Positions 32,024-61,444 of a stretch of 64,000 nt of DNA are shown one piece after another. The notes below the pieces were generated by a model, which searched no databases, had not been told where the DNA came from, and was given only the letters and a program-made list of their open reading frames with translations. The DNA lies in the IMG/VR virus record IMGVR_UViG_3300021962_000021, positions 62,001 to 126,000 of that record; one strand, 5' to 3'. Every line of letters starts with the position of its first letter. Positions within the stretch are counted from its first letter, which is position 1. A program made the translations under genes and the position numbers.

Positions 32024-32333
32024 AATAATAACACTATCAAATGAGATGATTGATTTGTTAGATGAAGCTCAGTTCTTTGAAGGTAATCCCTTTATTGAAC
32101 GATTACCACTTAAAAGAAAATTGCAAATTGCAATGCAAAGAAAGTGGGAACAAGAATTTGAAATGCATTTGACCGATTTAGAAGTTGAAAAAATAATGCA
32201 AGAAACTCTATCGGATTCGGTTGGTGATACAATTGAAAGTTTAGTGCAAAAAGGTGCATTGAATATGAGTATAGGGTCGGATGGTGAGATAGTTTATTCG
32301 GCAAATAAAGATTTTAACTTTGATGATTTATGA
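32007..32333 (+). CDS. hypothetical protein
   Basis: ORF. Confidence 0.65.
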   Translation: MDILPEIITLSNEMIDLLDEAQFFEGNPFIERLPLKRKLQIAMQRKWEQEFEMHLTDLEVEKIMQETLSDSVGDTIESLVQKGALNMSIGSDGEIVYSANKDFNFDDL

Positions 32334-33529
32334 TAGATAATAAGGAAAACAATTTTGAAAAAGAAATACTTAATAAGTATGCCTGCAATTCTCCATTTAA
32401 ATATATAGATGTTCAACCGCTTGGTAATTTCGTTTGTTGTCCTTTTTGGAATAAAACTAATTTAAGAGTTAATAAAGAAGGTGAACCAAATCCTTGGTTT
32501 GCAGTTGATGAAGATGAAGATTTATTAAGAAATTGGACTTCACCACAAGCCAAAAAAGTTAGAAGGGATATTTTAGATGGTTCATATGAGTCTTGTGATA
32601 AAGTTGTTTGTCCGTGTTTATCTCAAATATTAAGTAAGAGTCAAATTGAAGGTAAAGAGGTTATTCCATATAACTTTCAATTGAAAGAAGAACTGATGAA
32701 AGAATTAAATATCAGCTCGATAGAAGATATTGAAAACTTTGATATTACACCTGAGGAAATACTTTTTGGATTTGATAGAAGTTGTAATTACAAATGCCCA
32801 TCTTGCAGAACACATTTAATACCAAATGATGATGTTGATTCGATAGAATATAAAAGAAAAAAAATCATTATTGATAAAATAGATGAACAATATTCTTGGA
32901 ATTTAAGAAAAATTATAATAACAGGTTCTGGTGACCCGTTTTATTCAAAAATATTTAGAGAATATTTACAAAATTTTGACCCTAAAAAATATCCAAAGTT
33001 AAGAGAAATACAATTGGTTACGAATGGCTCTTTATTAAATAAGCAGATGTGGGATACCATGCCAAATATACATCAATATGTTAAGTGTATCGAAATAAGT
33101 ATAGATGCTGCAACTAAATTAACATATGAAACCAAAGTTAGATTGGGTGGAGTTTGGGAAACGCTTATACAAAATTTACTATTTCTTTCAAAATTAGAAA
33201 GTGTAGAAAGAGTTGTATTTTCTATGACTGTTAGTAAAAATAACTACAAAGAAATGTATATGTTTTGGGAGTTATTAAAACCTTTGTTCGAACATAAAAA
33301 AGTATTGGTTATAAATTATAGAAGATTGGTGCAGTGGGGAACATTTACACCCGAAGAATTAAAAGATTTATGTGTATTTGAAAAAGACCATCCATTGTTT
33401 TCCGATTTTATGAAAGAGTTAAAAAGAATACATCAACTACCACATGTTGATAATAATTTTAATGATTTGATTATTGAGGATGAAAAAGAAAAAACAAAAC
33501 CATTTAAAATACAAAAAAGTTTAATTTAA
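32330..33529 (+). CDS. radical SAM protein with N-terminal SPASM/twitch-like Cys cluster
   Basis: CNYKCPSC (CxxxCxxC), TGSGDPF, TNG, SIDA; N-terminal C..PF...CC...C..CP; ends QKSLI. Confidence 0.88.
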   Translation: MIDNKENNFEKEILNKYACNSPFKYIDVQPLGNFVCCPFWNKTNLRVNKEGEPNPWFAVDEDEDLLRNWTSPQAKKVRRDILDGSYESCDKVVCPCLSQILSKSQIEGKEVIPYNFQLKEELMKELNISSIEDIENFDITPEEILFGFDRSCNYKCPSCRTHLIPNDDVDSIEYKRKKIIIDKIDEQYSWNLRKIIITGSGDPFYSKIFREYLQNFDPKKYPKLREIQLVTNGSLLNKQMWDTMPNIHQYVKCIEISIDAATKLTYETKVRLGGVWETLIQNLLFLSKLESVERVVFSMTVSKNNYKEMYMFWELLKPLFEHKKVLVINYRRLVQWGTFTPEELKDLCVFEKDHPLFSDFMKELKRIHQLPHVDNNFNDLIIEDEKEKTKPFKIQKSLI

Positions 33530-33530
33530 A

Positions 33531-34937
33531 ATGAAAGTATTATTTGGATATGATATTATGACTTACAATGGTGAAATGCCAAATTGTCTGCATCCAAAAT
33601 TTTTGAATACAATATATCAAGCTTCCGATTTTAATTATGCATTCTCAGGAGAGCATTTTCAAAATAGATGGAATATCGGTTGGCATTTATATAATTCCAA
33701 TTTTTGGAATAACTATGTTGATAAAAAATCAGTATATGAAATTATAAATAATCACAAAAACACAAAATGGTTTTATCCGGTAGAACCGTTTGGAAGTATT
33801 GAAAGTTTTTTTGGAAACCATCCTACCTTTAATGAATTATGTTTAAAACAAATTTCATCAGTAGCATTGAATGAAATCAAAAGTGGTAATGGTAATTTAT
33901 TAATTAACTATATCATTGATGGTGGATTAGGAATTACAAAATCGAATTTCAAAAAGTTAGTTGATTTTACAAGAGAAAACGAAATACCCGATGAAAAGGT
34001 TTACCTGATATTTCAGGATTTTAAACTACAATCAAATCTTAAAAAGATGGGTGTTAATTACAATGTATTTGATTTTAATTTAGCACAACTATCTAAATCA
34101 CAGGAGTTTAATAACATAATTAATAATCCTGATTTTAAATTTTGGGGTGATAATTCATTTGAACCACAATTTGGACAAACCGAACATACTGCAAATAGTG
34201 TTTTAACATTTGAAGAATTTGAAAATAGTATAGGAAATCAAAAAAAGGATTTTTTATTTTTATGTAGACATTGGAAGTTGCATAGATTACTTATACTTTC
34301 AAAATTACATAAACTTGGAAAACTATTTTACAATAATACATCTTGGGATAAAAAGTTTTATCACGAAGATGTAATTACTGAATTTTTAAAACATGATGAA
34401 AATTTAGAATTGGCAGAAATAGTTAAAACGGTTTCTAAAAATTTAGATGTATCGGATTTGACTAAAATAGCAGGATATGGTTTTGAAAATAAATCAATAT
34501 ATTTAAATTCTTATATCAGTTTAGTTTCGGAATCTATATTTTTTCAAGTTAGAGATGATGAAGATGTATATGTAGAATTTCCAACAGGATATCTAAGTGA
34601 AAAGATTTGGAAACCAATAGGACACGCACAACCATTCATATTAGCCGGTCCTGCTAAATCTTTACAATACTTACAAAGTTTAGGATATAAAACCTTTCAT
34701 CCATACATTGATGAAAGTTATGATATAGAAACCGATGATTTTAAAAGATTGGAAATGATTTTTGAACAAATAGAAAAGTTTACTAAAAAATCAAAAGAAG
34801 AAAAGGATGAATTTTTACTTAATGTAAAAGATATTGTTAAACACAATCAGCAATTATTTTTAGATTATTCCAAAGAAGCATATAAAGATGATTGTAAAAA
34901 TATAATAAATTCATTAGCAAAACAAACTTTAATATAA
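33531..34937 (+). CDS. glycosyltransferase-like protein (GT10-like C-terminal motif)
   Basis: LVSES...LSEKIWKPI...QPFI...GYKTF...DESYD; ends KQTLI. Confidence 0.55.
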   Translation: MKVLFGYDIMTYNGEMPNCLHPKFLNTIYQASDFNYAFSGEHFQNRWNIGWHLYNSNFWNNYVDKKSVYEIINNHKNTKWFYPVEPFGSIESFFGNHPTFNELCLKQISSVALNEIKSGNGNLLINYIIDGGLGITKSNFKKLVDFTRENEIPDEKVYLIFQDFKLQSNLKKMGVNYNVFDFNLAQLSKSQEFNNIINNPDFKFWGDNSFEPQFGQTEHTANSVLTFEEFENSIGNQKKDFLFLCRHWKLHRLLILSKLHKLGKLFYNNTSWDKKFYHEDVITEFLKHDENLELAEIVKTVSKNLDVSDLTKIAGYGFENKSIYLNSYISLVSESIFFQVRDDEDVYVEFPTGYLSEKIWKPIGHAQPFILAGPAKSLQYLQSLGYKTFHPYIDESYDIETDDFKRLEMIFEQIEKFTKKSKEEKDEFLLNVKDIVKHNQQLFLDYSKEAYKDDCKNIINSLAKQTLI

Positions 34938-35185
34938 TGGAGTTTAATAAAACGGATGAAGAATTAAAACAAATGACAGATGATGAATTGTTTGAATACT
35001 TGGATGCAAAAGCATTACACTTAAAACAACACACATCGCCACTAAGTAGTTATCACACCAAAAGATTTGCAAGTATAAGTTCTGCAATATCTAATACGGA
35101 ATTTGATTATGATAGTGTAAAAAAGATTGCAAAAGAAAACGAGCAATTAGGATTTGAAAAATTTATAAATGATAAAAACAAATAG
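34937..35185 (+). CDS. hypothetical protein
   Basis: ORF. Confidence 0.65.
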   Translation: MEFNKTDEELKQMTDDELFEYLDAKALHLKQHTSPLSSYHTKRFASISSAISNTEFDYDSVKKIAKENEQLGFEKFINDKNK

Positions 35186-35187
35186 TT

Positions 35188-35679: not shown

Positions 35680-35680
35680 T

Positions 35681-36332: not shown

Positions 36333-36374
36333 AGGTTACTGATTGTTCACTAAATAAACAACACATGGACGACG

Positions 36375-37401: not shown

Positions 37402-37403
37402 TA

Positions 37404-37884: not shown

Positions 37885-37894
37885 ATAAATTTAT

Positions 37895-39109: not shown

Positions 39110-39141
39110 TAGATGTATATTTATATTTTAAAATAACATTT

Positions 39142-42129: not shown

Positions 42130-42336
42130 ATGACTTACGATTGTCACGGTAAATCACATTCTTTTGTAAAAGAGGATTTTGAAAATTGGTTATTGGTTAA
42201 TCAATCCAAATTACCACTTGAAGTAGTTACAGGAAATTCAGAACATATGCAAAGAATAATTAAAGGTGTTTTGGAATTTTACGATTTTGATTATTACATA
42301 CCGCCAACAAATAATGGAGTTATTAAAATTATATAA
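42130..42336 (+). CDS. minimal Smr-domain-like protein
   Basis: DCHG...VVTGNS...NNG. Confidence 0.55.
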   Translation: MTYDCHGKSHSFVKEDFENWLLVNQSKLPLEVVTGNSEHMQRIIKGVLEFYDFDYYIPPTNNGVIKII

Positions 42337-42358
42337 ATAAAATAAAACAAAATAAGTT

Positions 42359-43072
42359 ATGGAATTAGTATTAGCAATTGTAGCAGTAGTAGTAGTATTC
42401 TTTATTGGATACATTGTGGGTGCAAAACAAATGAGTAAAGAACAATATGAAGGGTCGCTTGGTTCATACACACCTGGTGAAGTTAATTGGTCACCACCAA
42501 CAAGTTCATTTAATAGTGAAGTACCAGTAGAATGGTTGGCAAGTGGTGATAAAGAAAGAGCACTACATATAGCCGGAATTAAAGAAGCAAGTTGGGAAAA
42601 ACAAAAAGAGTGGGAAGCTGAAAGAAAAGTAAAGGTTGAAGAAAAATCTGCACTTAGTGATAAACAATTAATGGAATACATTGAAGCAAAGAATGAGGAA
42701 ATATTAGTTAAAGCAGGTATCAAACAATATGATAGAAATAAAGGAGTGGATGATTTAACTAAAAAAATACAATCAATTGTAACGACAGATGATATTGATG
42801 AGGTTCAAAGAGTTAAATTGAAAGCAGCAGCTGCAAGAAAAGAATATGAAAGGGAAAGGCAAGAACGAATTAAAATTGACTTTGATGCATTGAACTTTAG
42901 TAGAATATCCAATGAAGCTAGAAAACAAATAACCGAAATAGTAAAGCAGGATTTGGAAAACAAAATAAAAGAAATCGAAAAAAATACTCCTGAAATTGAA
43001 GAAGTCATTGAAACGCCAAAACAAAAAAATAAACGAAGTGAAAATAAAAATAGAAAATCCACATCACATTAA
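42359..43072 (+). CDS. membrane-anchored coiled-coil protein
   Basis: N-terminal TM followed by charged helices. Confidence 0.7.
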   Translation: MELVLAIVAVVVVFFIGYIVGAKQMSKEQYEGSLGSYTPGEVNWSPPTSSFNSEVPVEWLASGDKERALHIAGIKEASWEKQKEWEAERKVKVEEKSALSDKQLMEYIEAKNEEILVKAGIKQYDRNKGVDDLTKKIQSIVTTDDIDEVQRVKLKAAAARKEYERERQERIKIDFDALNFSRISNEARKQITEIVKQDLENKIKEIEKNTPEIEEVIETPKQKNKRSENKNRKSTSH

Positions 43073-50142: not shown

Positions 50143-50364
50143 ATGAATACAATAGAGAACATAACAATAGATAGACTTACTACCATAGAGAAAGAAAGAG
50201 AAACTACAATGGCAGACACTAACTTTCAACAATGGTGTAAGGATATGAAGATAGGTTATATGGTCCAAAAGAGAGAAGGCATAGATAATGCTAACGCACT
50301 AATGCAACAATGGAACAACGAAGTTCAATCTGGACTACCTGAATTTATACGAAGGTGGTTTTAA
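50143..50364 (+). CDS. hypothetical protein
   Basis: ORF. Confidence 0.6.
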   Translation: MNTIENITIDRLTTIEKERETTMADTNFQQWCKDMKIGYMVQKREGIDNANALMQQWNNEVQSGLPEFIRRWF

Positions 50365-50414
50365 GATAAAAGGCTTACTCATATACAAAGTGAATAACAA
50401 AATGTATTCACGCC

Positions 50415-50446
50415 CCCGCTAGCAGTAACTTGCTAGCGGGTTCTTT
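50415..50446 (+). terminator. intrinsic terminator
   Basis: CCCGCTAGCAG/TTGCTAGCGGG plus TTCTTT. Confidence 0.7.
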
Positions 50447-50804
50447 GTGCCCTCCCGTTTCTACCCCACTGCGCACTGAATTTCGTGTAGCTCAAAAAGA
50501 GAGCGCATTGTAAAAGCGGGTCGGATACGTGCGAATACCGGGGGCAATTTTTTCGCTATAGAGCGCAATTTTGATATATGAGTTGACACTCATGTGGAAA
50601 AATATATTTACCTAAATACGAAGGAAAAAGAAAAAAACCTCGATAGTTATAAAAGACAGCAGCAGCAAAACAGCAAAGATAGCAAATAAAGCAAGACAGT
50701 AGACAGTATAACGCTTTAATCTATTTTCCTTTATACTTATTAATACGAATTCGAATATCAGTTGACTGATGGTTATTTATTTTTTAACCCTAAACTGAAA
50801 CAAA

Positions 50805-50915
50805 ATGGCAGTATTAGATTTCGTATTAAACCTTCAATTCGTTGTTGGTTTAGTAGTAGGTTGGAAAGTTCTTCCTTACCTAATTGATTTCGGAAAGAAG
50901 TTTTTAAAGAAATAA
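50805..50915 (+). CDS. 36-aa single-TM peptide
   Basis: MAVLDFVLNLQFVVGLVVGWKVLPYLIDFGKKFLKK, followed by a terminator. Confidence 0.6.
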   Translation: MAVLDFVLNLQFVVGLVVGWKVLPYLIDFGKKFLKK

Positions 50916-50951
50916 AAAAGAGACCCCACCAAAAGTGGGGTTTTTCTTTTT
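50916..50951 (+). terminator. intrinsic terminator
   Basis: GACCCCAC/GTGGGGTT plus T tract. Confidence 0.7.
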
Positions 50952-50966
50952 CAGATATTTATTATT

Positions 50967-51335
50967 ATGAAATTAAAATCAATATTAGAAGCAACGACTG
51001 TATTTAAAGCAGGAACTGTACCTGTTATGGTTAAGTTAGTATTTTGGGATGAAAAGAACGGATTGAAAGACCCAAAGAAAGTAAATGAGATACTAAGAGT
51101 ATTGGAAAGAAATCTAATGGTTAAGAAATCAGGATTCAAAGGATTAAACATAAATGATGTAATGAATGGATTTAAATACTATGAAGCAACCGATAAGTTA
51201 ATTGGTAATTATCCAAAGCATGTATTCTTACCTACAAACAAACCAATGGGGGCAATTAGTATGAAGAATTGTAATTTCGACCATGAATTACTAAAAGTAT
51301 CAAAGACATTAGAAGTAAAACAGAAAACCGTATAA
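50967..51335 (+). CDS. hypothetical protein (putative late gene)
   Basis: ATATTTAT upstream; MKLKSILE start. Confidence 0.7.
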   Translation: MKLKSILEATTVFKAGTVPVMVKLVFWDEKNGLKDPKKVNEILRVLERNLMVKKSGFKGLNINDVMNGFKYYEATDKLIGNYPKHVFLPTNKPMGAISMKNCNFDHELLKVSKTLEVKQKTV

Positions 51336-53206: not shown

Positions 53207-53785
53207 ATGGTTATAGATGTATATAACGGAAAATGGGGAGTTCCCGCGAAATGTGGTTCTCGATATTTTTCTAAAACCGTATTATTACTTAATTCACACA
53301 TTAATATAAATTATAGAGTTCCGTTTGAAAAATTAAACAAACTGGGATTAGAAGTGATTATAATACGAAATCCACTTTCACATTTAGAATCTGCTTTACA
53401 AACGGAAGTGATGGAGTGTTGGGATGATTCGGATAAAATTCTAAAGATATTATTAAAATTTTCCGATATACAATTTGGTGGAACACACTATCATCCACAT
53501 TTTTGTGAAAAAATATATTATATTTGGTATAATAGTGAATTGAGAATAGTGGATTTATCCAATCTTTCCGGATTTATGGAAGAAATATTGAAAACCATAC
53601 CATACAATCAAAATGAATACGATTTTCATACTGAACCAAATTATAAATCAAAAAAAGAAGTTTGGGATAAGTGCGTTGATTTATATCCTGAATTGATGGA
53701 TAAATTGATTAGATATACCCAAAGTGATATGAAGTATTATAATGCTTTATTGAATAAGGATAAGAGTTTAATTAAAATAATATAG
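53207..53785 (+). CDS. sulfotransferase-like protein (degenerate)
   Basis: PAKCGSR (5'PSB-like), IRNPLSHLESA (3'PB-like); ends KSLIKII. Confidence 0.55.
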   Translation: MVIDVYNGKWGVPAKCGSRYFSKTVLLLNSHININYRVPFEKLNKLGLEVIIIRNPLSHLESALQTEVMECWDDSDKILKILLKFSDIQFGGTHYHPHFCEKIYYIWYNSELRIVDLSNLSGFMEEILKTIPYNQNEYDFHTEPNYKSKKEVWDKCVDLYPELMDKLIRYTQSDMKYYNALLNKDKSLIKII

Positions 53786-53849
53786 GGTCTATCAATAGAG
53801 ATACCAAAAATTTTCTTTTAAAAAACGACCTCCCCCAACCCCCACCCCT

Positions 53850-53881
53850 TTTGGTAAATTCAAAAATTATTCGTATATTTG
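53850..53881 (+). promoter_or_regulatory. Bacteroidetes-type promoter of the tailoring-enzyme operon
   Basis: TTTG-N20-TATATTTG. Confidence 0.7.
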
Positions 53882-53897
53882 TTCATAAAACTAAACT

Positions 53898-54461
53898 ATG
53901 ATATTAGAAGATAAAGGTATATCGGTAATTCCAAAGTTTCTATCAAATGAAGAATGTGAATGGATTATAGATAAATGTCTTTCTGATTTGGATTTAAAAG
54001 ATGCGGAAGTATACAATACATATAAAAAAGAAAGTCAGAAAAAGACAAGAAAATCAAAAGTTGCATTTGTGGGTGATTTAAATAACATCAATACAAAAAT
54101 TACAAATGAAATATTAAAAAGAACACCGAAACAAAGAGGTTATGAATTATATGTTGAAAGTTTTCAATTTACAGAATATAATGTAGGCGATTACTTTGAT
54201 TGGCATTCTGATTCAAATGATAATATCTTTAAAGATAGAATATATACAGTTGTGATACAATTAAATGATGAGTATACTTCTGGTGATTTTCAATTAATGT
54301 TAGAAAATTCTATAACATTAAAACCAGGAAAAGGTAATATGTTTATATTTCCATCGGCAATATTACATAGAGTAAAACCCGTAGAATCAGGAAAAAGATA
54401 TTCATTAGTTAGTTGGTTGAAATTAAAAAAAATAGAAAATAATAAAACAGAATTGATATAA
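53898..54461 (+). CDS. 2OG-Fe(II) oxygenase (prolyl-4-hydroxylase-like)
   Basis: DWHSD, LHRVKPV, RYSLV; ends KTELI. Confidence 0.88.
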   Translation: MILEDKGISVIPKFLSNEECEWIIDKCLSDLDLKDAEVYNTYKKESQKKTRKSKVAFVGDLNNINTKITNEILKRTPKQRGYELYVESFQFTEYNVGDYFDWHSDSNDNIFKDRIYTVVIQLNDEYTSGDFQLMLENSITLKPGKGNMFIFPSAILHRVKPVESGKRYSLVSWLKLKKIENNKTELI

Positions 54462-55114
54462 TGGAATTTACAAAATATAATTTCGGGCCCGAATTAATGA
54501 AAACCAATATTGATTTGGATTTATGTAAAGAACTTCTATCCGTTGGGAGAAATGAAATTTTAATAGATAATAAGCTCGATTCCATAACATTTGATACATC
54601 TTACAAATATAGTTTTGAAAATGTAAGTTATTTTAAAAATAAAATTTCCGTTTATATAGAAAATTATATAAAAGAAATTGCCAAAATTAGAAATTTAAAG
54701 CCATTTCGATTTGGAATTAATATTGAAGATTTATGGATTAATTTTCAAAAAAGTAGAGATTTTAATTCTCCACATTTTCATGCATATGATATATCCTTTG
54801 TAATATATGTGGATATGCCGGATGAAATTAAAAATGAAAAAACTATTAAAAGAGGATTTCAAAATGGAAGTATATCATTTTTATATGGACAAAATGTAAA
54901 AAAATTTGATTCAAATGCACAAGAATTTTCAAATACGGTAAATAGTTATATGTCACCGATAACACAGATAAATCATTCACCGATTACAGGGGAAATGTTT
55001 ATATTTCCAGCGTATTTAATGCATTATGTTAGTCCATTTTTTACAAAAGATGTAGAACGGATATCAGTTGCGGGTAATGTCAGTTTAATAGATAATAAAA
55101 AAAGTATAATATAA
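54461..55114 (+). CDS. putative 2OG-Fe(II) oxygenase (TIGR02466-like)
   Basis: WIN, PHFH, FPAYLMHYV, RISVAGN; ends KKSII. Confidence 0.8.
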   Translation: MEFTKYNFGPELMKTNIDLDLCKELLSVGRNEILIDNKLDSITFDTSYKYSFENVSYFKNKISVYIENYIKEIAKIRNLKPFRFGINIEDLWINFQKSRDFNSPHFHAYDISFVIYVDMPDEIKNEKTIKRGFQNGSISFLYGQNVKKFDSNAQEFSNTVNSYMSPITQINHSPITGEMFIFPAYLMHYVSPFFTKDVERISVAGNVSLIDNKKSII

Positions 55115-55401
55115 TGAGTTTTAATCCTAAAGAAATTATTAATGCTTGGATTACATCATTCAACCCTAATTCAACACAAAAGAGTTTAGCAGAAGAACGT
55201 ATGAGCATTTGTATGAAGTGTGAGTTTAGAAAAGAAATTATACACAATAAAAAATGGTCTGCAATATGTGGTGGATGTGGATGTCCTTTAGAAAAGAAAA
55301 TATTTACAGACCAGGCCGGAACATGTCCAAAATCAAAGTGGAATAGTGTTGAAGAAAAATATATAAAAACTCTAAAAGTTAAAACTAAAACAATTATTTA
55401 A
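55114..55401 (+). CDS. small Cys-rich protein (DUF6171-like)
   Basis: RMSICMKC, CGGCGCP, CPKSKW; ends KTKTII. Confidence 0.7.
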   Translation: MSFNPKEIINAWITSFNPNSTQKSLAEERMSICMKCEFRKEIIHNKKWSAICGGCGCPLEKKIFTDQAGTCPKSKWNSVEEKYIKTLKVKTKTII

Positions 55402-55403
55402 TT

Positions 55404-56045
55404 ATGAAAAAAATTACGTTTGAAGATGGTGTAGATTTGTATATAGTAAAATTAGAAAATACAAAGTTACAATCTGATGTTTTAGGAAATTGTATATCAT
55501 TTTTATCTACCGCCAATTATGTTCCCCAAGATAATTATCCATATTTAAACGATTGGGGTAGTTTTGATTTTAAAAAAGAAATGATACCATCGAATTATAT
55601 TGAAGAAATTATTAAAATTTGTTTGAATGAATGTGTTGAGTTAGGTATAAAAGATGAACTGAATTTTAATAAAGTTAATATTAATGCTTGGATAAATGTT
55701 GTAAAAACTGGAAAACCAAAACAAAATAATTTTAAATATGGTGGTGATGTTAAATTACATAACCACATAGATTTGCAAAAAATTATAAATTCTTTTTATC
55801 CGGAATATACTTTTGTATATTATGCCCAAATGCCAAATAATCTATCAGATACGGAAGGCACTTTAATAGTAGAAGGTAAAAACAAAAAAAGATATTATTA
55901 TTTACCAGAAGAAGGTGAAGTGGTTATTATGAAATCTAATTTAGAACATTCACCAAATAATTCACCCAATTCAACAAAAAATAGAATTGTTATAGCGGGT
56001 AATGTAGGATTTGAATCTGCGAAAAAAATTAGTAGTTTAATTTAA
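55404..56045 (+). CDS. putative 2OG-Fe(II) oxygenase
   Basis: AWINV, LHNH, LEHSP, RIVIAGN; ends KISSLI. Confidence 0.7.
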   Translation: MKKITFEDGVDLYIVKLENTKLQSDVLGNCISFLSTANYVPQDNYPYLNDWGSFDFKKEMIPSNYIEEIIKICLNECVELGIKDELNFNKVNINAWINVVKTGKPKQNNFKYGGDVKLHNHIDLQKIINSFYPEYTFVYYAQMPNNLSDTEGTLIVEGKNKKRYYYLPEEGEVVIMKSNLEHSPNNSPNSTKNRIVIAGNVGFESAKKISSLI

Positions 56046-56082
56046 AAAACCAATATATTTATATAAATAAGACAATAAAAAA

Positions 56083-57618
56083 ATGAAAGCATTAATAATT
56101 GGAACGGATTTTTTAAAGGATGCATCCGGTAATTTAAGAATAATAGAAACAAACACAAATGTGGATGTTCATAACAAAATTGTTCCACAATTGGATTGGA
56201 ATACATTTAAGCAATTTTTAATAGATAATTCTATTACAAAATTGCATTTTATATATACGGATGGTAATTTTATAAATACGGAAAAAGAAAATGTATTTGA
56301 TACAACAACAGAAAATATATCTTTAAAAGATAAAATGAGTGAAATAATGGTTGAATTATCAGGCACATTCAACCACTATGAAGTTCCTAAAAATTCAATA
56401 ACAGTTCCATATATAGAAGATGCGGATGATGTATTAATACTGAGAACATCATATGATACTACTGCATTAGTAGATGAAAATTATGCAAAAGATAAGGTAA
56501 ATTTTCATAGAGTAATTTCAAATGAAACATTTGCACCAAACGTGTATTATCATTCAGAAACTGATACAAATCTTAATATAGACCAATTAGTAAATTTACA
56601 TACTACAGCCGGCGATGCACCGAATTATATTGTAAAAACAAGATATCCAAATACAAATTATTTAACTTATCCAAAGTTTTACAAAATACAATCATTGGAA
56701 TCTTTACAATCTTTAAAAGATTCATTAACAGAATTGGAATATATAGAAGAATACCACACACACCCGGATAATTTTATTGATAATAAAATAGGCGTAATAA
56801 GAAGTTTGGATATAATATATGGTGGAACATTAAGTATATTACATTTGGGTTCGTATATTATGACGGCCGGTGTTGAAAATGATGCGTGGGTAACCGAATA
56901 TGATACAAATGGTAAAATGGAACAAAATTCCAGAGTATTATGGATGAGTAAATCCCTAATAAGTAAATTTGGTACAACTTATATTTTGGATGATGATACA
57001 CCAATATTATATTCAGATGGAAGTTTTAAATATCCAAATCAAATTTTAGTTAATGATTCATTAAAAACGATAACTCTTCCTTGGGTTCCACTAAATGAAA
57101 CATCCGAAACAGGAGAAGTATTATATATGCCAGATTTGAATTCAGGAAGTTTCAGCTCTGACTTAGAATCATTTACTCAATCAAATACAACCGTAATTGA
57201 TTTAGGAACACAAACTAAAGAATCCCTAATGATTAGGGTAACATTGGAAAATGGTATAGTTTATGAAGATTTGCCGGCTAGTTCTATGTTGGTAGAGGAA
57301 TACGATACATTACAAACTACATTTGTATTTACAAATAGATTTAGAATAAATGATTCAATTGTATTTTTTGATTATGTGAATAATACTTTAGTAAAATCAA
57401 AAATAACAAATTTGGAAATCGTATATGTTAATAAAAAAATATATGATATAAATGTTGAAACAAATGATTTGTTTTTACCATTAGCAGATGAAACATTGGG
57501 ACTTACTTTTGTACAACACAACGGTACATGTTATGGTTGGTGTGGTGCTTGGATGTGTGCAGTTTGGTGTTGTAGTGCATGTGGTTTCTGTGGTGGCCAA
57601 CCTCCTTCAAAACTTTAA
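56083..57618 (+). CDS. circularly permuted ATP-grasp / Hint domain / Cys-Trp-rich tail fusion protein
   Basis: N-terminal GTDFLKD..G..IIETNTN then YIVK, YIEEY; Hint blocks ILDDDTPILYSDGSFK..I.VND, IYDINV, QHN; tail GTCYGWCGAWMCAVWCCSACGFCGGQPPSKL. Confidence 0.75.
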   Translation: MKALIIGTDFLKDASGNLRIIETNTNVDVHNKIVPQLDWNTFKQFLIDNSITKLHFIYTDGNFINTEKENVFDTTTENISLKDKMSEIMVELSGTFNHYEVPKNSITVPYIEDADDVLILRTSYDTTALVDENYAKDKVNFHRVISNETFAPNVYYHSETDTNLNIDQLVNLHTTAGDAPNYIVKTRYPNTNYLTYPKFYKIQSLESLQSLKDSLTELEYIEEYHTHPDNFIDNKIGVIRSLDIIYGGTLSILHLGSYIMTAGVENDAWVTEYDTNGKMEQNSRVLWMSKSLISKFGTTYILDDDTPILYSDGSFKYPNQILVNDSLKTITLPWVPLNETSETGEVLYMPDLNSGSFSSDLESFTQSNTTVIDLGTQTKESLMIRVTLENGIVYEDLPASSMLVEEYDTLQTTFVFTNRFRINDSIVFFDYVNNTLVKSKITNLEIVYVNKKIYDINVETNDLFLPLADETLGLTFVQHNGTCYGWCGAWMCAVWCCSACGFCGGQPPSKL

Positions 57619-57630
57619 AAATAATTAAAA

Positions 57631-57750
57631 ATGAAAGATAAAATAATTTCTTCGGAAATAGTATTAACCAATAACACCACAAATCAGGCCATTGCAACTA
57701 TTATGCAGCAGGTCGCAAACTTAATTTATACGGATGTAACTGGTTCATAA
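57631..57750 (+). CDS. 39-aa peptide downstream of the Hint fusion (not in ORF track)
   Basis: MKDKIISSEIVLTNNTTNQAIATIMQQVANLIYTDVTGS, fills the gap. Confidence 0.6.
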   Translation: MKDKIISSEIVLTNNTTNQAIATIMQQVANLIYTDVTGS

Positions 57751-57761
57751 ATTTTATTAAA

Positions 57762-58496
57762 ATGGTTATAAATAATTGTATTGTTTTTATACCAATACCA
57801 AAAAATGCATCTTGGTCGGTAGAAGATACTTGTATTGAATACGGGTTGGATTTAACATATCCGAATATTTTATGGGAAAATTCTATTAAATTTGGAGTAA
57901 AAAATCCAGAAAAACATATTCATTCGGATATAAATTATTTAATTGATTCGCTTGGTATGGATTTTGAATTTGTATGTATAATAAGAAATTCTACGGATAG
58001 ATTTATATCAGCTTGGAAATTTTTTATACAAGAAATAATTCAAAGTATATCCGAAGAGGGTTCAAATATCCTTAAAAATTTAGATAATAATTTTATAATT
58101 TCTTTTTTTAAAGACAACATATACGAATTCAAAAATGCGTATATATCTTATGAAACTAGAGTAAATCTCCTAATAAAATTATTAGAAACGGCGGGTGTAA
58201 TTCAATATTATAATATATCCGATGAATTTAAAAAAAGATACGCAATACACATTATGTCATTCGTATCGCAATATCAATGGATATCATCATCAAAAGTAAA
58301 AGTAAAAGAATTTCATTTTGATAGATTATATGAATTTGAAGATTATATATCAAAAAAACTTAATATAGATTTTAAGTTAATTCATAAAAATAAAACGCAA
58401 TTAGATTATTCTGCAATATTGAAAACCGATGAATTAATAAAATTTGTCGATACATATATTGATGGTTCATACAAAAGAGTTAAATCTATTATTTAA
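57762..58496 (+). CDS. sulfotransferase family 2-like protein
   Basis: FIPIPKNASWS, IRNSTDRFISAW, SQYQW; ends VKSII. Confidence 0.75.
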   Translation: MVINNCIVFIPIPKNASWSVEDTCIEYGLDLTYPNILWENSIKFGVKNPEKHIHSDINYLIDSLGMDFEFVCIIRNSTDRFISAWKFFIQEIIQSISEEGSNILKNLDNNFIISFFKDNIYEFKNAYISYETRVNLLIKLLETAGVIQYYNISDEFKKRYAIHIMSFVSQYQWISSSKVKVKEFHFDRLYEFEDYISKKLNIDFKLIHKNKTQLDYSAILKTDELIKFVDTYIDGSYKRVKSII

Positions 58497-59317
58497 TGAA
58501 ATTATTTACATTCGGTGATAGTTGGACCGAAGGAGTTGGTTCCGATTGGCAGGAAGAATTAAAAACCGAAGATTTAGAAGAAAGAACAAAAATACGTCAT
58601 AAATACGCATGGCCTACATTGTTATCAAAACATTTAAATATTCCTTTTGATAATTTTGGAATAGGTGGTTGTTCTAATAAAAGTATATTTGATGCAGTTT
58701 GTAATTCAGTAGATACCGATTTAATTAAAAAAGATGATTTGGTTGTTATAATGTGGAGTTCATCTTTAAGAGATTCTGTTCCATTTTTTCCTGATAATAA
58801 TTCCTGGCACTATTGGGGTGAGAGATATAAACGAAAAGAATATTTGTATAAAAAAGTATTTAAAAATACAAATATAACTACAAAATACGATAGAATAAAA
58901 AAAGAATATCAAGAATATTTTTTAGCAAATTTATTTACGGATGAATATTATCAAATCGTAAACCAAAATTATATTTTATATTTACAATGGATGTTTAAAA
59001 AAATTGGTATAAGATATATTTTTTGTGATGCATTTGATTTAATGATAAAAGATGATATTTCAAAAAACATAGATAAAACTAATCTAATTGATAAAAACCA
59101 TTATTGGGGTATTTCAAATAAAACTTTAAAAGATTTATTAATAAATACAAATAGAAAGGATGTGTGGGGAGATGGACAACATTGGAAAGATTTAACAGAG
59201 GGTAAACATCCTAACAAAAATGGATATAAATTAATTGCGAATGAACTATATGATTTTATATTAAATAAAAACATATTAACATATAAGACGAACAATATCG
59301 AAAATATTATTATATGA
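58496..59317 (+). CDS. SGNH/GDSL hydrolase-fold protein
   Basis: FGDSWTEG, NFGIGGCSN, HPNKNGY; ends ENIII. Confidence 0.8.
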   Translation: MKLFTFGDSWTEGVGSDWQEELKTEDLEERTKIRHKYAWPTLLSKHLNIPFDNFGIGGCSNKSIFDAVCNSVDTDLIKKDDLVVIMWSSSLRDSVPFFPDNNSWHYWGERYKRKEYLYKKVFKNTNITTKYDRIKKEYQEYFLANLFTDEYYQIVNQNYILYLQWMFKKIGIRYIFCDAFDLMIKDDISKNIDKTNLIDKNHYWGISNKTLKDLLINTNRKDVWGDGQHWKDLTEGKHPNKNGYKLIANELYDFILNKNILTYKTNNIENIII

Positions 59318-59859
59318 ATTATTATATAAACAATTTGTTTGATAAAAAAGAATGCCAATCTATAATAGAATTTGCAGAAAATAATGGCATACAATTTTCA
59401 TATAATCCAAATGAAGTATGGGATTGTAAAAGAATTTATGATGATGAATTTAAATCAAATATAATTCAAAAAATCAAAGAAAAATATAATAAAAATGAAT
59501 TTAAATTATGGTTTGATTTGAATAAATTTAATATAAAGGATGTAAATATTAGTTTGACAAAGTATTATGATAATAGATGGTTGGATTTGCATTTAGATAC
59601 TACATCACAATTTACAACAGTTATAGTTTTATCGGCCGGATTTAGTGATGGTAGCTTCGTATTATCCGAAAAAATGGATGATATAAAAAATGGAAATAAA
59701 TACATACTAAATATTGGTGAATCTATTTCATTTGATGGTAGTAAAACATATCACGGTGTAATGCCAGTCTATTCAGGTATTAGATATGCATTAAATATAT
59801 GGATGACAAATACAGATTTTAAATATTATCAATTAGATAAATCAAAAAAATTGATATGA
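59314..59859 (+). CDS. 2OG-Fe(II) oxygenase
   Basis: LHLD, YHGVMPV, RYALNIW; ends SKKLI. Confidence 0.8.
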   Translation: MNYYINNLFDKKECQSIIEFAENNGIQFSYNPNEVWDCKRIYDDEFKSNIIQKIKEKYNKNEFKLWFDLNKFNIKDVNISLTKYYDNRWLDLHLDTTSQFTTVIVLSAGFSDGSFVLSEKMDDIKNGNKYILNIGESISFDGSKTYHGVMPVYSGIRYALNIWMTNTDFKYYQLDKSKKLI

Positions 59860-60380
59860 ATATTTTAATAATTTCCTTACCAAGAACAGGTTCCACCGAA
59901 TTAGGTAAAAAATTAGCAATTGATAATAAATTGGTTTATAATTTTGAACCATTTAATCCATTTAATAAAATAAATACTCAAAATAATATTCATAATGTAG
60001 TTATAAAAACAATTATATTTCATAAACCAAATTCTATAAAAGAATCCAATAGAGTAGACTGGTTAATAAGTTTGATATCAAAATTTGAAAAAACAATTTT
60101 ATTAAGTAGAAGAGATTTAAAGGCATGTGCGGAAAGTTGGTCTTATCTAAACTATAAAATGAAAACATCGAATTTTTCATCTATATCACAATATCTTTGG
60201 GAAAAAACACCAAACTATGATGAAGCATTTTATAACATAAAGTTGTGGAATGATGAATTAAACTATATATCGCAAAAAACAAATATACCAATAACTTATT
60301 ATGAAGATATCTATGATTTAAATGATAAAAATAGATTGAGAAAAGGAAATAAAGATGATTATAATTACAATTTAATATAA
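59856..60380 (+). CDS. sulfotransferase-like P-loop protein
   Basis: SLPRTGST, EPF, RRD....ES, YYEDI; ends NYNLI. Confidence 0.7.
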   Translation: MNILIISLPRTGSTELGKKLAIDNKLVYNFEPFNPFNKINTQNNIHNVVIKTIIFHKPNSIKESNRVDWLISLISKFEKTILLSRRDLKACAESWSYLNYKMKTSNFSSISQYLWEKTPNYDEAFYNIKLWNDELNYISQKTNIPITYYEDIYDLNDKNRLRKGNKDDYNYNLI

Positions 60381-61444
60381 TGATTGATTTAAAAGATTAT
60401 ATATGCAAAGTTCCATTTGAAATATTGGAAATACATGATGAATCTTATTTTTTATGCTGTGCAAGTTGGTTAAAAAAACACTTACCAAAGAATCAACCTA
60501 TGAAAGATGTGTGGAATAGTGATGAGGCAAAGGATATTAGAAAATCGGTATTGAATGGTTCATATCTTTATTGTGATAAAAAACAATGTCCGTATCTATC
60601 TCAATTAATAAATTTAAAAACCAATAATTTAGGTCCTATAAAACATTATTCTCAAATAGACCCATCTTTTTTTAATAATTACAATTTTGAAACAGGAAAA
60701 ATGTATCAGGGACCAAAAACCATACATATGAGTTTTGATAGGACGTGTAATTATAAATGCCCATCTTGTAGAATAGAAATGATTGTTGCAAATAGTGATA
60801 AAATACAAAAAATAAATATAACAATAGAAGAAATGGAATCTCTATATGCAAACGATATAGAAATGATATATTGTTCAGGCACTGCAGACCCGTTTGCTTC
60901 CGTTTCATATAGAAATTTTTTAAGAAAATTTAATCCTAAAAAATATCCAAATTTAAAATCAATACACTTACATACAAATGCCAGTTTATGGAATAAGGAA
61001 ATGTGGGATAGTATGCCGGAAATACATGATTATGTAAAGAGTTGTGAAATAAGTATTGATGCTGGTTCAAAATTTACATACGAAAATGTAACAAGATTGG
61101 GTGGTAATTGGGATAATTTAATATCCAATCTTAATTTTATTTCAACCATAAAAAGTATACAAACTGTAAAATGTTCATTTGTAGTTCAACAATCTAATTA
61201 TACAGAAATGTCTGAATTTTTAAGATTAATTACTTTCATATTTGGTAATAAAACAAAAGTATTTTTTGGAAGAATAACTAATTGGGGAACATTTTCCGAT
61301 GAAACCTTTAAAATGATTGATGTGGGTAATGTGCTACATCCAGAACATTCTTTGTTTTTAGATGAGTTCAAAAAGGTAGCCACCAATCCATATGTATTTC
61401 ATAATATGTATGATTTAATAGAAATAAAAAAATCTATAATTTAA
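60380..61444 (+). CDS. radical SAM protein with N-terminal SPASM/twitch-like cluster (paralog of 32330..33529)
   Basis: CNYKCPSC, SGTADPF, SIDAG; ends KKSII. Confidence 0.88.
   Translation: MIDLKDYICKVPFEILEIHDESYFLCCASWLKKHLPKNQPMKDVWNSDEAKDIRKSVLNGSYLYCDKKQCPYLSQLINLKTNNLGPIKHYSQIDPSFFNNYNFETGKMYQGPKTIHMSFDRTCNYKCPSCRIEMIVANSDKIQKINITIEEMESLYANDIEMIYCSGTADPFASVSYRNFLRKFNPKKYPNLKSIHLHTNASLWNKEMWDSMPEIHDYVKSCEISIDAGSKFTYENVTRLGGNWDNLISNLNFISTIKSIQTVKCSFVVQQSNYTEMSEFLRLITFIFGNKTKVFFGRITNWGTFSDETFKMIDVGNVLHPEHSLFLDEFKKVATNPYVFHNMYDLIEIKKSII

What the first reader, a model, noticed from the sequence alone, without database searches (positions are those of the whole stretch)
32330..61444. Shared C-terminal tag (basic residues, then [LI]-I-COOH) on 12 proteins of unrelated folds
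Seen termini: IQKSLI (33529), AKQTLI (34937), KSLIKII (53785), NKTELI (54461), NKKSII (55114), KTKTII (55401), KISSLI (56045), RVKSII (58496), IENIII (59317), KSKKLI (59859), YNYNLI (60380), IKKSII (61444). All ten accessory genes of the 53-61 kb cluster carry it, as do two enzymes about 20 kb away. Only about two of the ~100 other ORFs end in [LI]I (16962, 42130). The Hint fusion lacks it. Inference: a docking or sorting signal (PDZ-ligand-like) that recruits the enzymes to a scaffold, capsid or compartment, or a degron timing their removal.
Basis: partly seen in the sequence, partly recalled or inferred. Interest (0 to 1): 0.88.

Follow-up and report, generated by a model that had tools for sequence, protein, structure and literature searches.

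The report
Shared C-terminal tag on phage enzymes
About a dozen unrelated enzymes of an uncultured AT-rich jumbo phage all end in the same five residues (Lys-Lys-Ser/Thr-Leu/Ile-Ile), which relatives keep strictly at the C-terminus and which always lies beside one self-cleaving ATP-grasp/Hint protein, so it is most likely an undescribed docking signal.

Summary
15 of 119 window ORFs end in [LI]I against 1.5 expected, and 10 of 11 large ORFs at 53.2-61.4 kb do.

The consensus is K-K-[S/T]-[L/I]-[I/L]-COOH. AT bias does not explain it:
- Synonymous codons vary freely at the tag positions.
- 28 of 41 equally AT-rich genes lack it.
- Homologues in AT-rich pelagiphage and cyanophages lack it.
- Orthologues down to about 25% identity keep it at the exact C-terminus, including 120 of 120 database relatives of one radical SAM enzyme.

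Families are all-or-none. Tagged: 2OG oxygenases, radical SAM, sulfotransferase-like, GDSL, a small Cys protein and a 468-aa protein, plus Trp halogenase and a SET-domain protein in relatives. Untagged: nucleotide-sugar enzymes, carbamoyltransferase, APS kinase, HD, Hsp20.

Tagged genes flank an untagged protein (ATP-grasp-like N-domain, Hint domain, polymorphic Cys-rich or S74 tail) plus a small ORF in all seven independently fetched contexts.

Best reading, inferred and not shown: a docking motif that brings tailoring enzymes to this scaffold or precursor. A degron or a localisation signal is not excluded. I found no published description.

The parts
32330..33529 (+). Tagged radical SAM enzyme (399 aa), ends ...QKSLI. 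Paralogue of 60380-61444, about 20 kb from the cluster.
   Evidence: PF04055 2.7e-7; NF033640 twitch-domain rSAM 2e-15, below cut-off; terminus
33531..34937 (+). Tagged 468-aa protein of unknown family, ends ...KQTLI.
   Evidence: No Pfam, PHROG, NCBIfam or PDB match. About 100 of 120 database relatives (56-97% id) end in two hydrophobic residues and 72 of 120 have S/T at -3. Homologues lie inside the cluster in L023.
53207..53785 (+). Tagged 192-aa protein, ends ...SLIKII. The weakest tag.
   Evidence: Only 2 of 3 family members in the loci end [LI][LI]. No family hit.
53898..54461 (+). Tagged 2OG-Fe(II) oxygenase (187 aa), ends ...KTELI.
   Evidence: PF13640 2.1e-15. Family 37 of 37 tagged. 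The tag is an extension of about 8 residues beyond the last conserved strand compared with untagged cyanophage homologues.
54461..55114 (+). Tagged 2OG-Fe(II) oxygenase-like protein (217 aa), ends ...KKSII.
   Evidence: PF13759 2e-12. Orthologues end KKTLI and IKTII.
55114..55401 (+). Tagged small Cys-rich protein (95 aa), ends ...KTKTII.
   Evidence: phrog_13558 7e-7. 14 of 15 family members tagged. Present next to the fusion gene in distant loci L038 and L039.
55404..56045 (+). Tagged 2OG oxygenase-like protein (213 aa), ends ...ISSLI.
   Evidence: PF13640 3e-4, below cut-off. 12 of 14 family members end [LI][LI]; the other two end SFI and TLM.
56083..57618 (+). Untagged 511-aa protein. ATP-grasp-like N-domain (about 1-290), divergent Hint domain (about 300-480, invariant His479-Asn480, no N-terminal nucleophile), then a Cys/Trp-rich tail of about 30 aa ending P-S-K-L. 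Candidate scaffold or precursor.
   Evidence: AF2 pLDDT 87, pTM 0.81. Foldseek hedgehog/intein/BIL, TM up to 0.79, prob 1.0. Glutathione synthetase 1m0t E 5.7e-4 from the first, low-confidence model. RimK Mg-site hairpin aligned, not significant. Polymorphic tails.
57631..57750 (+). Untagged conserved small ORF (39 aa) that always follows the fusion gene.
   Evidence: Found after the fusion gene in all 15 loci checked, in two sequence types that follow the fusion subgroup. Also in L037-L041. Called as a gene by the source pipelines.
57762..58496 (+). Tagged 244-aa protein, ends ...RVKSII. Sulfotransferase-like by motif reading only.
   Evidence: 12 of 12 family members tagged. No profile hit.
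58496..59317 (+). Tagged GDSL/SGNH hydrolase-like protein (273 aa), ends ...ENIII.
   Evidence: PF00657 3.6e-7. 23 of 30 or 28 of 28 full-length members end in two hydrophobic residues.
59314..59859 (+). Tagged 181-aa protein in the same BLAST family as 53898 (2OG oxygenase), ends ...KSKKLI.
59856..60380 (+). Tagged sulfotransferase-like protein (174 aa), ends ...YNYNLI.
   Evidence: PF00685 1.3e-3, weak. 19 of 19 family members tagged.
60380..61444 (+). Tagged radical SAM enzyme (354 aa), ends ...IKKSII.
   Evidence: NF033640 2.2e-15. All 120 database relatives shown (54-99% id) end in two hydrophobic residues: 98 end [LI]I, 101 have S/T at -3 and 107 have K at -4.
61509..62623 (+). Untagged neighbours: HD phosphohydrolase-like protein (61509-62150) and Hsp20 (62186-62623). 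They mark the right-hand boundary of the tagged block.

Best explanation
The pentapeptide K-K-[S/T]-[L/I]-[I/L]-COOH is a short linear recognition motif appended as a flexible C-terminal extension to enzymes that act on one shared macromolecular substrate.

It most likely docks them, through its free carboxylate and the two hydrophobic side chains, onto a common partner encoded in the same module. The best candidate partner is the ATP-grasp-like N-domain of the untagged 511-aa protein, possibly together with the small ORF that follows it.

That protein would serve as both scaffold and precursor. The recruited oxygenases, radical SAM enzymes, sulfotransferases, esterase, and in relatives the halogenase and SET methyltransferase, would decorate its polymorphic Cys/Trp-rich tail or something bound to it. 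The Hint domain would then release the tail by Asn cyclisation at the invariant His-Asn.

A universal five-residue tag would make enzymes plug-and-play, which fits the rapid turnover of the enzyme sets between related phages.

Shown: the motif, its peptide-level conservation, its strict terminal anchoring, its restriction to certain enzyme classes, its linkage to the fusion gene, and the Hint fold. Inferred: binding, the identity of the receptor, the substrate, and Hint cleavage.
For: - Enrichment is far beyond composition.
- Selection is at the peptide level. Ser at -3 uses AGT, TCT, TCA, AGC and TCG; Thr uses four codons; Leu uses six; all roughly in background proportions.
- The tag is kept at the exact C-terminus in orthologues from about 25% to 99% identity. 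Chance [LI]I endings drift.
- Families are bimodal: 36 of 55 have under 10% hydrophobic-dipeptide ends and 11 of 55 have 90% or more.
- The tag is an extension beyond the conserved fold.
- Homologues in cyanophages S-MbCM6 and P-SSM2 and in pelagiphage HTVC008M are untagged.
- Every context fetched for the fusion family has tagged flanking genes and the small ORF: the window and its syntenic relatives L002-L030, then L037 (66% id, S74 tail), L038 (29% id), L039, L040, L041 and L042.
- In those clusters the precursor-making enzymes are untagged: epimerases/dehydratases, DegT, dTDP-sugar isomerase, carbamoyltransferase and APS kinase.
- The two tagged genes 20 kb away keep the tag. Homologues of one of them lie inside the cluster in L023, so the tag follows function, not position.
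- The N-domain has many invariant charged residues and a D..E-x-N hairpin like the Mg site of RimK-type ATP-grasp enzymes, a class that binds peptide C-terminal carboxylates.
- Hint fold with invariant His-Asn.
Against: - No binding was tested or modelled; the tools take no complexes.
- The linkage to the fusion gene is partly by construction, because the loci were found through cluster genes. Only L037-L042 are independent probes.
- The ATP-grasp assignment is weak: Foldseek E 5.7e-4 at TM 0.23 from the low-confidence model, hhalign E 0.26, and one Pfam RimK hit at 0.057.
- The sugar-nucleotide genes in relatives suggest the substrate could be a glycan, not the Cys-rich tail.
- Variants of the fusion end in S74 or extra Hint domains with no Cys-rich tail at all, yet still have tagged neighbours.
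- The small Cys-rich protein is tagged, and no enzyme family was detected for it.
- About 17% of the 468-aa family lack the tag.
Confidence: 0.4

Rival explanations
1. Degron. The tag marks these enzymes for a host or phage C-terminus-reading protease (ClpXP-type, FtsH, Lon or a tail-specific protease), so a set of potentially harmful redox enzymes is kept short-lived or removed at a set time.
For: The motif is basic residues followed by a non-polar free C-terminus. From general knowledge, this resembles the MuA-like class of ClpX C-terminal signals and the non-polar-tail rule for C-terminal degradation. Strict anchoring at the terminus is what such proteases need.
Against: A degron does not explain the tight genetic linkage to the fusion gene and small ORF. 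It does not explain why precursor-making enzymes of the same clusters lack the tag, or why homologous enzymes in other AT-rich phages need none. The conserved Ser/Thr at -3 is not a feature of known ClpX or ssrA-type signals. No protease gene was seen in the roughly 91 kb examined. The 438-aa AAA+ protein at 14725-16041 scores best as a CobS-like family.
Confidence: 0.15
2. Localisation signal. The tag, perhaps with the loosely amphipathic 5-6 residues before it, sends the enzymes to the membrane, to a phage-built compartment or into the capsid, where the substrate sits (a lipid-linked glycan or a virion protein).
For: Tagged classes are those that would act on a polymer or on an anchored acceptor, while cytosolic precursor enzymes are untagged. 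Some fusion variants carry a Peptidase_S74 tail-fibre chaperone domain (P0300 PF13884 1.9e-5), which hints at a virion link. Positions -9 and -8 are modestly enriched in I, L and F. Conceptually this parallels peroxisomal PTS1 and encapsulin cargo peptides.
Against: Membrane-targeting helices are not conserved residue by residue across families, and several tags follow polar stretches (for example ...NNIENIII and ...DDYNYNLI). No shell, encapsulin or microcompartment gene lies in or near the cluster. Radical SAM enzymes need cytosolic reductants. The encapsulin motif, as recalled from the literature, is not matched.
Confidence: 0.15
3. Ligase substrate. The free C-terminal carboxylate of the tag is activated by the ATP-grasp domain and covalently joined to an amine, for example the new N-terminus of the tail released by the Hint domain or a small molecule. 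This would make a C-terminal protein-conjugation system.
For: From general knowledge, ATP-grasp enzymes of the RimK, glutathione-synthetase, LysX and tubulin-tyrosine-ligase type act on peptide C-terminal carboxylates. The N-domain keeps an invariant D9...E22-x-N24 hairpin that hhalign places on the RimK Mg site. Strict terminal anchoring of the tag fits a requirement for the alpha-carboxylate. The fusion with Hint puts a newly made amine next to the ligase.
Against: The ATP-grasp assignment is weak. It is unclear why ten different enzymes should be conjugated. Fusion variants ending ...HNK would release only one residue. There is no precedent.
Confidence: 0.1
4. Not a protein signal. The ending is a by-product of AT-rich codon bias, or of a nucleotide motif (WTWATWTRA) used for translational coupling or as a promoter-like element at gene junctions.
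For: Tagged genes are the most AT-rich (25.4% against 32.0% GC). Seven of the 12 stops overlap or abut the next start. ATA is somewhat over-used as the last codon.
Against: 28 of 41 genes under 29% GC are untagged. Other TAATG-coupled gene pairs in the window end in K, L, E or N. Ser and Thr at -3 use unrelated codon families, and Leu uses CTN as well as TTR. Three tagged genes are followed by 37-112 nt spacers (53785, 56045, 61444). AT-rich pelagiphage and P-SSM2 homologues are untagged.
Confidence: 0.03
5. Sliding-clamp-binding tail. The tag tethers DNA-modifying enzymes to the phage or host clamp, as the C-terminal tails of T4-type polymerases and bacterial clamp partners do.
For: C-terminal S-L-[I/F]-type endings resemble the last three positions of the bacterial clamp-binding pentapeptide (from general knowledge). 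Phages use 2OG oxygenases, radical SAM enzymes and transferases for DNA hypermodification (PMC8989533 appeared).
Against: The 2OG oxygenases match the prolyl-hydroxylase-like families PF13640 and PF13759, not TET/JBP. Trp halogenase, SET, sulfotransferase and GDSL enzymes are not DNA enzymes. The DNA ligase in the window is untagged. The linkage to the fusion gene is left unexplained.
Confidence: 0.03

Closest known systems
Class I PDZ-binding motifs ([S/T]-x-hydrophobic-COOH)
   Same: Extreme C-terminal position, need for the free carboxylate implied by strict anchoring, Ser/Thr two residues before a hydrophobic last residue (63% of distinct tags), and presence on unrelated proteins.
   Different: No PDZ domain was found in the cluster proteins scanned. 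Bacterial PDZ proteins are mostly periplasmic proteases. The preceding Lys-Lys and the Leu/Ile at -2 are also conserved here.
Peroxisomal PTS1 (Ser-Lys-Leu-COOH type) and encapsulin cargo-loading peptides
   Same: One short C-terminal peptide shared by enzymes of unrelated folds, which assigns them to a common destination.
   Different: Different sequence. The virus is prokaryotic. No shell or import receptor gene is in view. Here the destination is more likely a single protein than a compartment.
RiPP leader/RRE recognition, and docking domains of NRPS/PKS
   Same: A set of tailoring enzymes (radical SAM, 2OG oxygenase, halogenase, sulfotransferase) clusters with a candidate precursor carrying a Cys-rich C-terminal core. 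Short terminal peptides mediate assembly.
   Different: The logic would be inverted: the enzymes carry the peptide and the precursor carries the folded recognition domain. No RRE domain was detected. The precursor is a 500-aa protein with a built-in Hint protease instead of a leader peptide.
ATP-grasp enzymes that read protein C-termini (RimK with ribosomal protein S6, LysX with the LysW carrier protein, tubulin tyrosine ligase)
   Same: An ATP-grasp-like domain is genetically linked to proteins with a conserved C-terminal tail. LysW is also a small zinc-ribbon-type protein, as the tagged 95-aa Cys protein may be.
   Different: Those systems have one tailed partner with an acidic tail. Here more than ten different enzymes share a basic-hydrophobic tail. 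The ATP-grasp assignment is only weakly supported.
Polymorphic toxin-type architecture (pretoxin-HINT followed by a variable C-terminal module)
   Same: A conserved N-terminal part, then a Hint domain, then a highly polymorphic C-terminal module (many Cys-rich tails, S74, extra Hint domains). Relatives hit PF07591 PT-HINT.
   Different: It is phage-encoded. There is no recognisable toxin domain. The small ORF downstream follows the N-domain subgroup and not the tail type, unlike an immunity gene. The first Hint lacks the N-terminal nucleophile.
ssrA-type and MuA-type C-terminal degrons
   Same: Basic residues followed by a non-polar free C-terminus.
   Different: The conserved Ser/Thr and the tight linkage to one gene module are not features of known degrons. 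Degradation was not tested.

Membership tests
PDZ class I ligand | Motif at the extreme C-terminus with a free carboxylate | tested here: met
   Orthologues never extend past the motif, while control ORFs do.
PDZ class I ligand | Ser/Thr at -2 relative to a hydrophobic last residue | tested here: met
   82 of 130 distinct tags have S/T, and 130 of 130 have I, L or M as the last residue. Lys is the main alternative at that position.
PDZ class I ligand | A PDZ-domain partner | tested here: not met
   No PDZ hit in any cluster protein scanned against Pfam. The rest of the 238-kb genome and the host could not be scanned.
ClpX / ssrA-type degron | C-terminal sequence of a known recognition class | tested here: inconclusive
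   Basic plus non-polar, like the MuA-type class recalled from the literature, but the S/T-L-I core has no known counterpart.
ClpX / ssrA-type degron | Tag-dependent proteolysis | not testable with these tools
   Needs half-life measurements.
Encapsulin or microcompartment cargo peptide | Shell gene next to the cargo genes | tested here: not met
   No shell-like family among the cluster proteins or among the genes with precomputed Pfam annotation in L032, L037, L038 and L041.
Hint / intein superfamily (residues about 300-480 of the 511-aa protein) | Hint fold | tested here: met
   Foldseek on the pLDDT 87 model: 1at0 TM 0.79, BIL2 0.70, mini-inteins 0.75-0.78, prob 1.0. Relatives hit PF01079, PF07591 and PF14890.
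Hint / intein superfamily | C-terminal His-Asn for Asn cyclisation | tested here: met
   H479 and N480 are invariant in 58 sequences.
Hint / intein superfamily | N-terminal Cys/Ser/Thr nucleophile and block B Thr-x-x-His | tested here: not met
   The position aligned with residue 1 is I, H or F, and the 'VTLENG' block has no His (alignment). Only C-terminal cleavage is plausible, so this is not a splicing intein.
ATP-grasp superfamily (residues 1-290) | ATP-grasp fold and Mg/ATP-binding residues | tested here: inconclusive
   Glutathione synthetase 1m0t E 5.7e-4, TM 0.23, from the low-confidence model only. N-domain hits are not visible in the capped list for the good model. hhalign places residues 4-25 on RimK 243-263, E 0.26. 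Pfam RimK at 0.057 in 1 of 15 members.
RiPP biosynthetic cluster | Precursor with a core peptide plus tailoring enzymes in one cluster | tested here: inconclusive
   A Cys/Trp-rich tail follows a self-cleaving domain, and radical SAM, 2OG, halogenase and sulfotransferase-like genes lie around it. Modification of the tail is not shown, and some variants lack the tail.
RiPP biosynthetic cluster | Leader peptide recognised by an RRE domain in the enzymes | tested here: not met
   No RRE/PqqD-like hit in any tagged enzyme.
Peptidase S74 intramolecular chaperone (tail of some fusion variants) | Profile match above the curated cut-off | tested here: met
   P0300 hits PF13884 at 25.3 bits against a cut-off of 22. 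The same module is seen in L037, L038 and L039. It is absent from the window's copy.

The most novel reading that the evidence does not exclude
A plug-and-play recruitment code in uncultured jumbo phages. Any enzyme that acquires the five-residue ending K-K-S/T-L-I is captured, through its free C-terminus, by the ATP-grasp-derived domain of a self-cleaving precursor protein. Fast-changing sets of oxygenases, radical SAM enzymes, halogenases and sulfo-, methyl- and glycosyl-transferases can then decorate a polymorphic Cys-rich peptide, which the Hint domain releases. This inverts the leader-peptide logic of known RiPP pathways. The capture might even be covalent, by ATP-grasp ligation.
Probability: 0.3. 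Interest if true: 0.9.

Novelty: new variant of a known kind. Interest (0 to 1): 0.8.

Why it matters
Short C-terminal peptides that assign unrelated enzymes to a common destination are known from eukaryotic peroxisomes, PDZ networks and encapsulins. They are not known from phage biosynthetic clusters.

Here a five-residue code is conserved across hundreds of metagenomic proteins of at least ten fold classes. It is tied to a previously undescribed protein family with 352 representative clusters: an ATP-grasp-like domain, a Hint domain and a polymorphic tail.

If the tag is a docking signal, three things follow:
- It gives a simple rule for finding all enzymes of the pathway in a genome, wherever they are encoded.
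- It is a minimal portable tag for assembling enzymes on a scaffold.
- It opens a way into what abundant freshwater phages, possibly of SAR11-like hosts, make with their many 2OG oxygenases, a long-standing puzzle in cyanophage and pelagiphage genomics.

Whatever the mechanism, binding, stability and localisation can all be tested directly with synthetic peptides and reporter fusions.

Tried and rejected
- AT bias or a nucleotide motif: rejected by codon analysis, by the many untagged AT-rich genes and by untagged homologues in AT-rich phages.
- Translational coupling: other TAATG junctions lack the ending, and three tagged genes are followed by spacers.
- The three other [LI]I-ending ORFs as extra tagged proteins: two were rejected because their orthologues do not anchor the terminus. 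The 54-aa ORF was not followed up.
- Near-identical DNA in cultured phages: none. tblastn with the radical SAM enzyme against cultured phages: none. The lineage is uncultured.
- Sequence searches of the 511-aa protein: nothing significant in Pfam, PHROGs, PADLOC or PDB sequences. Only fold comparison identified the Hint domain.
- The first AF2 model (15 sequences) was poor (pLDDT 63). A 58-sequence alignment gave pLDDT 87. The capped Foldseek lists for the good model show only Hint matches, so the N-domain fold could not be re-examined.
- Hsp20 as receptor through its IxI-binding groove: considered and set aside. The tag lacks the i/i+2 hydrophobic pattern, and cyanophages carry hsp20 without tags.
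- The small downstream ORF as an immunity gene: set aside. Its two types follow the N-domain subgroup, not the tail type.
- Literature: searches for the motif strings, for phage RiPP clusters and for shared C-terminal signals found nothing relevant. Iyer et al. 2021 (PMC7824862) describe a cyanophage halogenase / 2OG oxygenase / carbamoyltransferase cluster. None of the passages retrieved in a term search of that paper concerned a shared terminus.
- Function of the 468-aa protein: no profile, PDB or named homologue. My reading of a fucosyltransferase-like motif is unsupported by any tool.

Full report
**What the window is.** The 64-kb window is positions 62001-126000 of IMGVR_UViG_3300021962_000021, a 238-kb viral contig. 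It has about 30% GC, and virtually all convincing genes are on the + strand. It carries 16 tRNA genes, RNA and DNA ligases, a CobS-like AAA+ protein and Hsp20. No cultured phage shares its DNA. The only protein-level links to cultured phages are distant, to Microcystis, cyano- and pelagiphages. The single hit in 185,579 reference genomes is a 3.7-kb contig binned into a Pelagibacterales MAG. That is a weak hint at a freshwater SAR11-like host.

**The observation.** All 12 termini are exactly as listed.
- Of 119 non-overlapping + strand ORFs, 15 end in [LI]I against 1.5 expected from the internal dipeptide frequency (P about 3e-11).
- Seven end in [ST][LI]I against 0.18 expected.
- In the 53.2-61.4 kb block, 10 of 11 large ORFs carry the ending (P about 1e-18).
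- Over 130 distinct gene ends from the window and relatives, the consensus is K(-5) K(-4) S/T(-3) L/I(-2) I/L(-1).

**It is a peptide signal, not composition.**
- Serine at -3 is written with AGT, TCT, TCA, AGC and TCG. Threonine uses all four codons, and leucine uses TTR and CTN. All are roughly in background proportions.
- Tagged genes are the most AT-rich (25.4% GC against 32.0%), but 28 of the 41 genes below 29% GC have other endings.
- Other gene pairs coupled by TAATG end in K, L, E or N.
- Homologous 2OG oxygenases and Trp halogenases of the AT-rich phages HTVC008M and P-SSM2, and of S-MbCM6, have unrelated endings.
- Aligned with those homologues, the tag is an extension of about eight residues beyond the last conserved strand.

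**Conservation.**
- Thirty related loci from IMG/VR, at 25-93% identity, keep the tag family by family: 37/37 2OG oxygenases, 19/19 sulfotransferase-like, 17/18 radical SAM, 14/15 small Cys protein, 12/12 for the 57762 family, and 0/20 for the Hint fusion.
- All 120 listed database relatives of the radical SAM enzyme at 60380 (54-99% identity) end in two hydrophobic residues. Of these, 101 have S/T at -3 and 107 have K at -4.
- The 468-aa family is looser, with about 100 of 120 keeping the ending.
- With all loci pooled, 55 families of five or more members are sharply bimodal. Thirty-six have under 10% hydrophobic-dipeptide ends and eleven have 90% or more. One of the eleven is peptide deformylase, which has its own unrelated ending.
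- Negative control: orthologues of the 81-aa ORF at 16962, which also ends in LI, end in NKLV, NKIIA, KKLIV or ADKF. The orthologue of the 68-aa ORF at 42130 ends in VIKIY. Chance endings drift and real tags stay anchored.
- A further 27 kb of the same contig shows no additional clear tag.

**Who carries it.**
- Tagged in the window: two radical SAM enzymes, four 2OG oxygenase-family proteins, two or three sulfotransferase-like proteins, a GDSL/SGNH protein, a 95-aa Cys-rich protein and a 468-aa unknown.
- Tagged in relatives: a flavin-dependent Trp halogenase (PF04820, 2e-90), a SET-domain protein, DUF6734- and DUF6445-like proteins, and several unknowns of 400-520 aa.
- Untagged in the same clusters: NAD-dependent sugar epimerases/dehydratases, a DegT aminotransferase, dTDP-sugar isomerase, carbamoyltransferase, APS kinase, DUF2061, an HD protein, Hsp20 and peptide deformylase.

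The split reads as follows. Enzymes that must find a macromolecular acceptor are tagged, and enzymes that make diffusible donors are not. This is my inference.

**The untagged centre of the cluster.**
- The 511-aa protein at 56083-57618 has no profile match.
- With a 58-sequence alignment AlphaFold gives pLDDT 87 and pTM 0.81.
- Residues about 300-480 are a Hint domain (hedgehog 1at0 TM 0.79, BIL2, mini-inteins).
- His479-Asn480 are invariant, but the N-terminal nucleophile and the block B histidine are missing. Only C-terminal cleavage is plausible.
- The N-terminal 290 residues resembled eukaryotic glutathione synthetase in the first, poorer model.
- The protein starts with an invariant D9...E22-x-N24 hairpin that hhalign places on the Mg-binding hairpin of E. 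coli RimK, though not significantly. An ATP-grasp origin is therefore possible but not established.
- A profile of this N-domain finds 352 representative clusters among 1.84 billion proteins. The domain is always N-terminal, in proteins of 440-906 aa.
- What follows the His-Asn is strikingly polymorphic. There are dozens of different Cys-rich tails of 30-100 aa, a Peptidase_S74 tail-fibre chaperone module, both together, or one or two extra canonical Hint/PT-HINT domains ending ...HNK.
- A small ORF of 37-49 aa always follows. It comes in two types, which track the N-domain subgroup and not the tail type.

**Linkage.** Every locus with enough upstream sequence has the fusion gene inside the tagged block. 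I then probed the fusion family independently through six distant members:
- L037: S74 tail, 66% identity.
- L038: 29% identity.
- L039: the MAG contig.
- L040: 766 aa with two extra Hint domains.
- L041: 906 aa, 32.5% GC.
- L042.

In all six, the genes flanking the fusion end in ...KKSLL...KRSLI...SKTII...VKNLI...KKKLL...KKNLL...KYSLI...KKKKSLI and the like. The two tagged genes at 32-35 kb show that the tag goes with the function and not with position. One is a paralogue of the cluster's radical SAM enzyme. Homologues of the other lie inside the cluster in L023.

**Interpretation.**
- Best supported: a docking motif that brings the tagged enzymes to a partner encoded in the module. The prime candidate partner is the N-domain of the fusion protein. 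Its polymorphic tail, or something attached to it, would be the substrate, and the Hint domain would be the release step. I put this at about 0.4.
- Variant: a covalent version in which the ATP-grasp uses the tag's carboxylate as substrate, about 0.1.
- Rival: a degron, about 0.15.
- Rival: a membrane, compartment or virion localisation signal, about 0.15.
- Minor rivals: a clamp-binding tail or a nucleotide-level artefact, about 0.03 each.

The remaining weight, roughly 0.15, goes to mechanisms not listed here. None of the protein-level readings was tested directly. The tools cannot model complexes, and the phage is uncultured.

**Comparison with what is known.** In form the tag is a class I PDZ-type ligand, but no PDZ partner is in view. 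In logic it is closest to PTS1 or encapsulin cargo peptides, and to an inverted RiPP leader/RRE system. The fusion protein has the layout of polymorphic-toxin proteins (pretoxin-Hint plus a variable C-terminus) without a recognisable toxin. Literature searches found no description of the tag or of the fusion family. Iyer et al. 2021 (PMC7824862) describe a related enzyme cluster in cyanophages as a possible halogenated secondary-metabolite or capsule-decoration system. The cyanophage homologues I checked are untagged.

**Verdict.** The interpretation as a functional C-terminal signal is supported. The specific function remains inferred. I class it as a new variant of a known kind (C-terminal short linear targeting or docking motifs), attached to a new protein family, and of high interest.

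Noticed in passing
window 56083-57618, with relatives P0121-P0389 and L037-L042: The N-domain + Hint protein family has extremely polymorphic C-terminal modules after an invariant His-Asn: dozens of unrelated Cys-rich tails, Peptidase_S74 chaperone modules, or extra tandem Hint domains ending ...HNK. This layout resembles polymorphic-toxin proteins, but it is phage-encoded and has no known toxin domain.
   Followed up: partly
window 57631-57750: A 39-aa ORF is conserved directly after the fusion gene in every relative. It has two sequence types that follow the fusion subgroup. Its function is unknown. It could be an adaptor or a second substrate.
   Followed up: partly
window 1133-3424 and 6615-6700: An array of 16 tRNA genes, including two tRNA-Met, two Leu, two Gly and two Ser, lies in a locally GC-richer stretch (43% GC).
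   Followed up: no
window 25976-27961 and 42353-42361: The nonamer TAAGTTATG, ending in the start codon, occurs 6 times against 1.2 expected. Five occurrences are at annotated starts (25982, 27090, 27420, 27959, 42359). No Shine-Dalgarno-like sequence is seen, which suggests an unusual translation-start or promoter-proximal signal.
   Followed up: partly
window 53207-61444 and 32330-34937: Tagged genes are compositionally distinct (mean 25.4% GC against 32.0% for other genes over 90 aa). The enzyme content of the block differs between related phages, as in a hypervariable island.
   Followed up: partly
L039 (VHCC01000082.1, a 3.7-kb contig of a Pelagibacterales MAG): This is the only match to the fusion family in the reference-genome collection. 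It is probably a phage fragment binned by composition, and it weakly suggests a freshwater SAR11-like host.
   Followed up: no
window 50364-50967: An ORF-poor stretch of about 600 nt sits next to the GC-richer 48-50 kb region (38% GC). There is no Rfam match at gathering threshold.
   Followed up: no
window 12253-16041: A 770-aa protein followed by a 438-aa CobS-like AAA+ protein (phrog_249, 5e-27) recalls the CobS/CobT-like pairs of cyanophages. Both are untagged.
   Followed up: no
L038:8941-9378 and L037/L038 flanks: In relatives the tagged block sits next to nucleotide-sugar genes, a carbamoyltransferase and an APS kinase. This supply chain would fit the sulfotransferase-like tagged enzymes and possible glycosylation.
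   Followed up: partly
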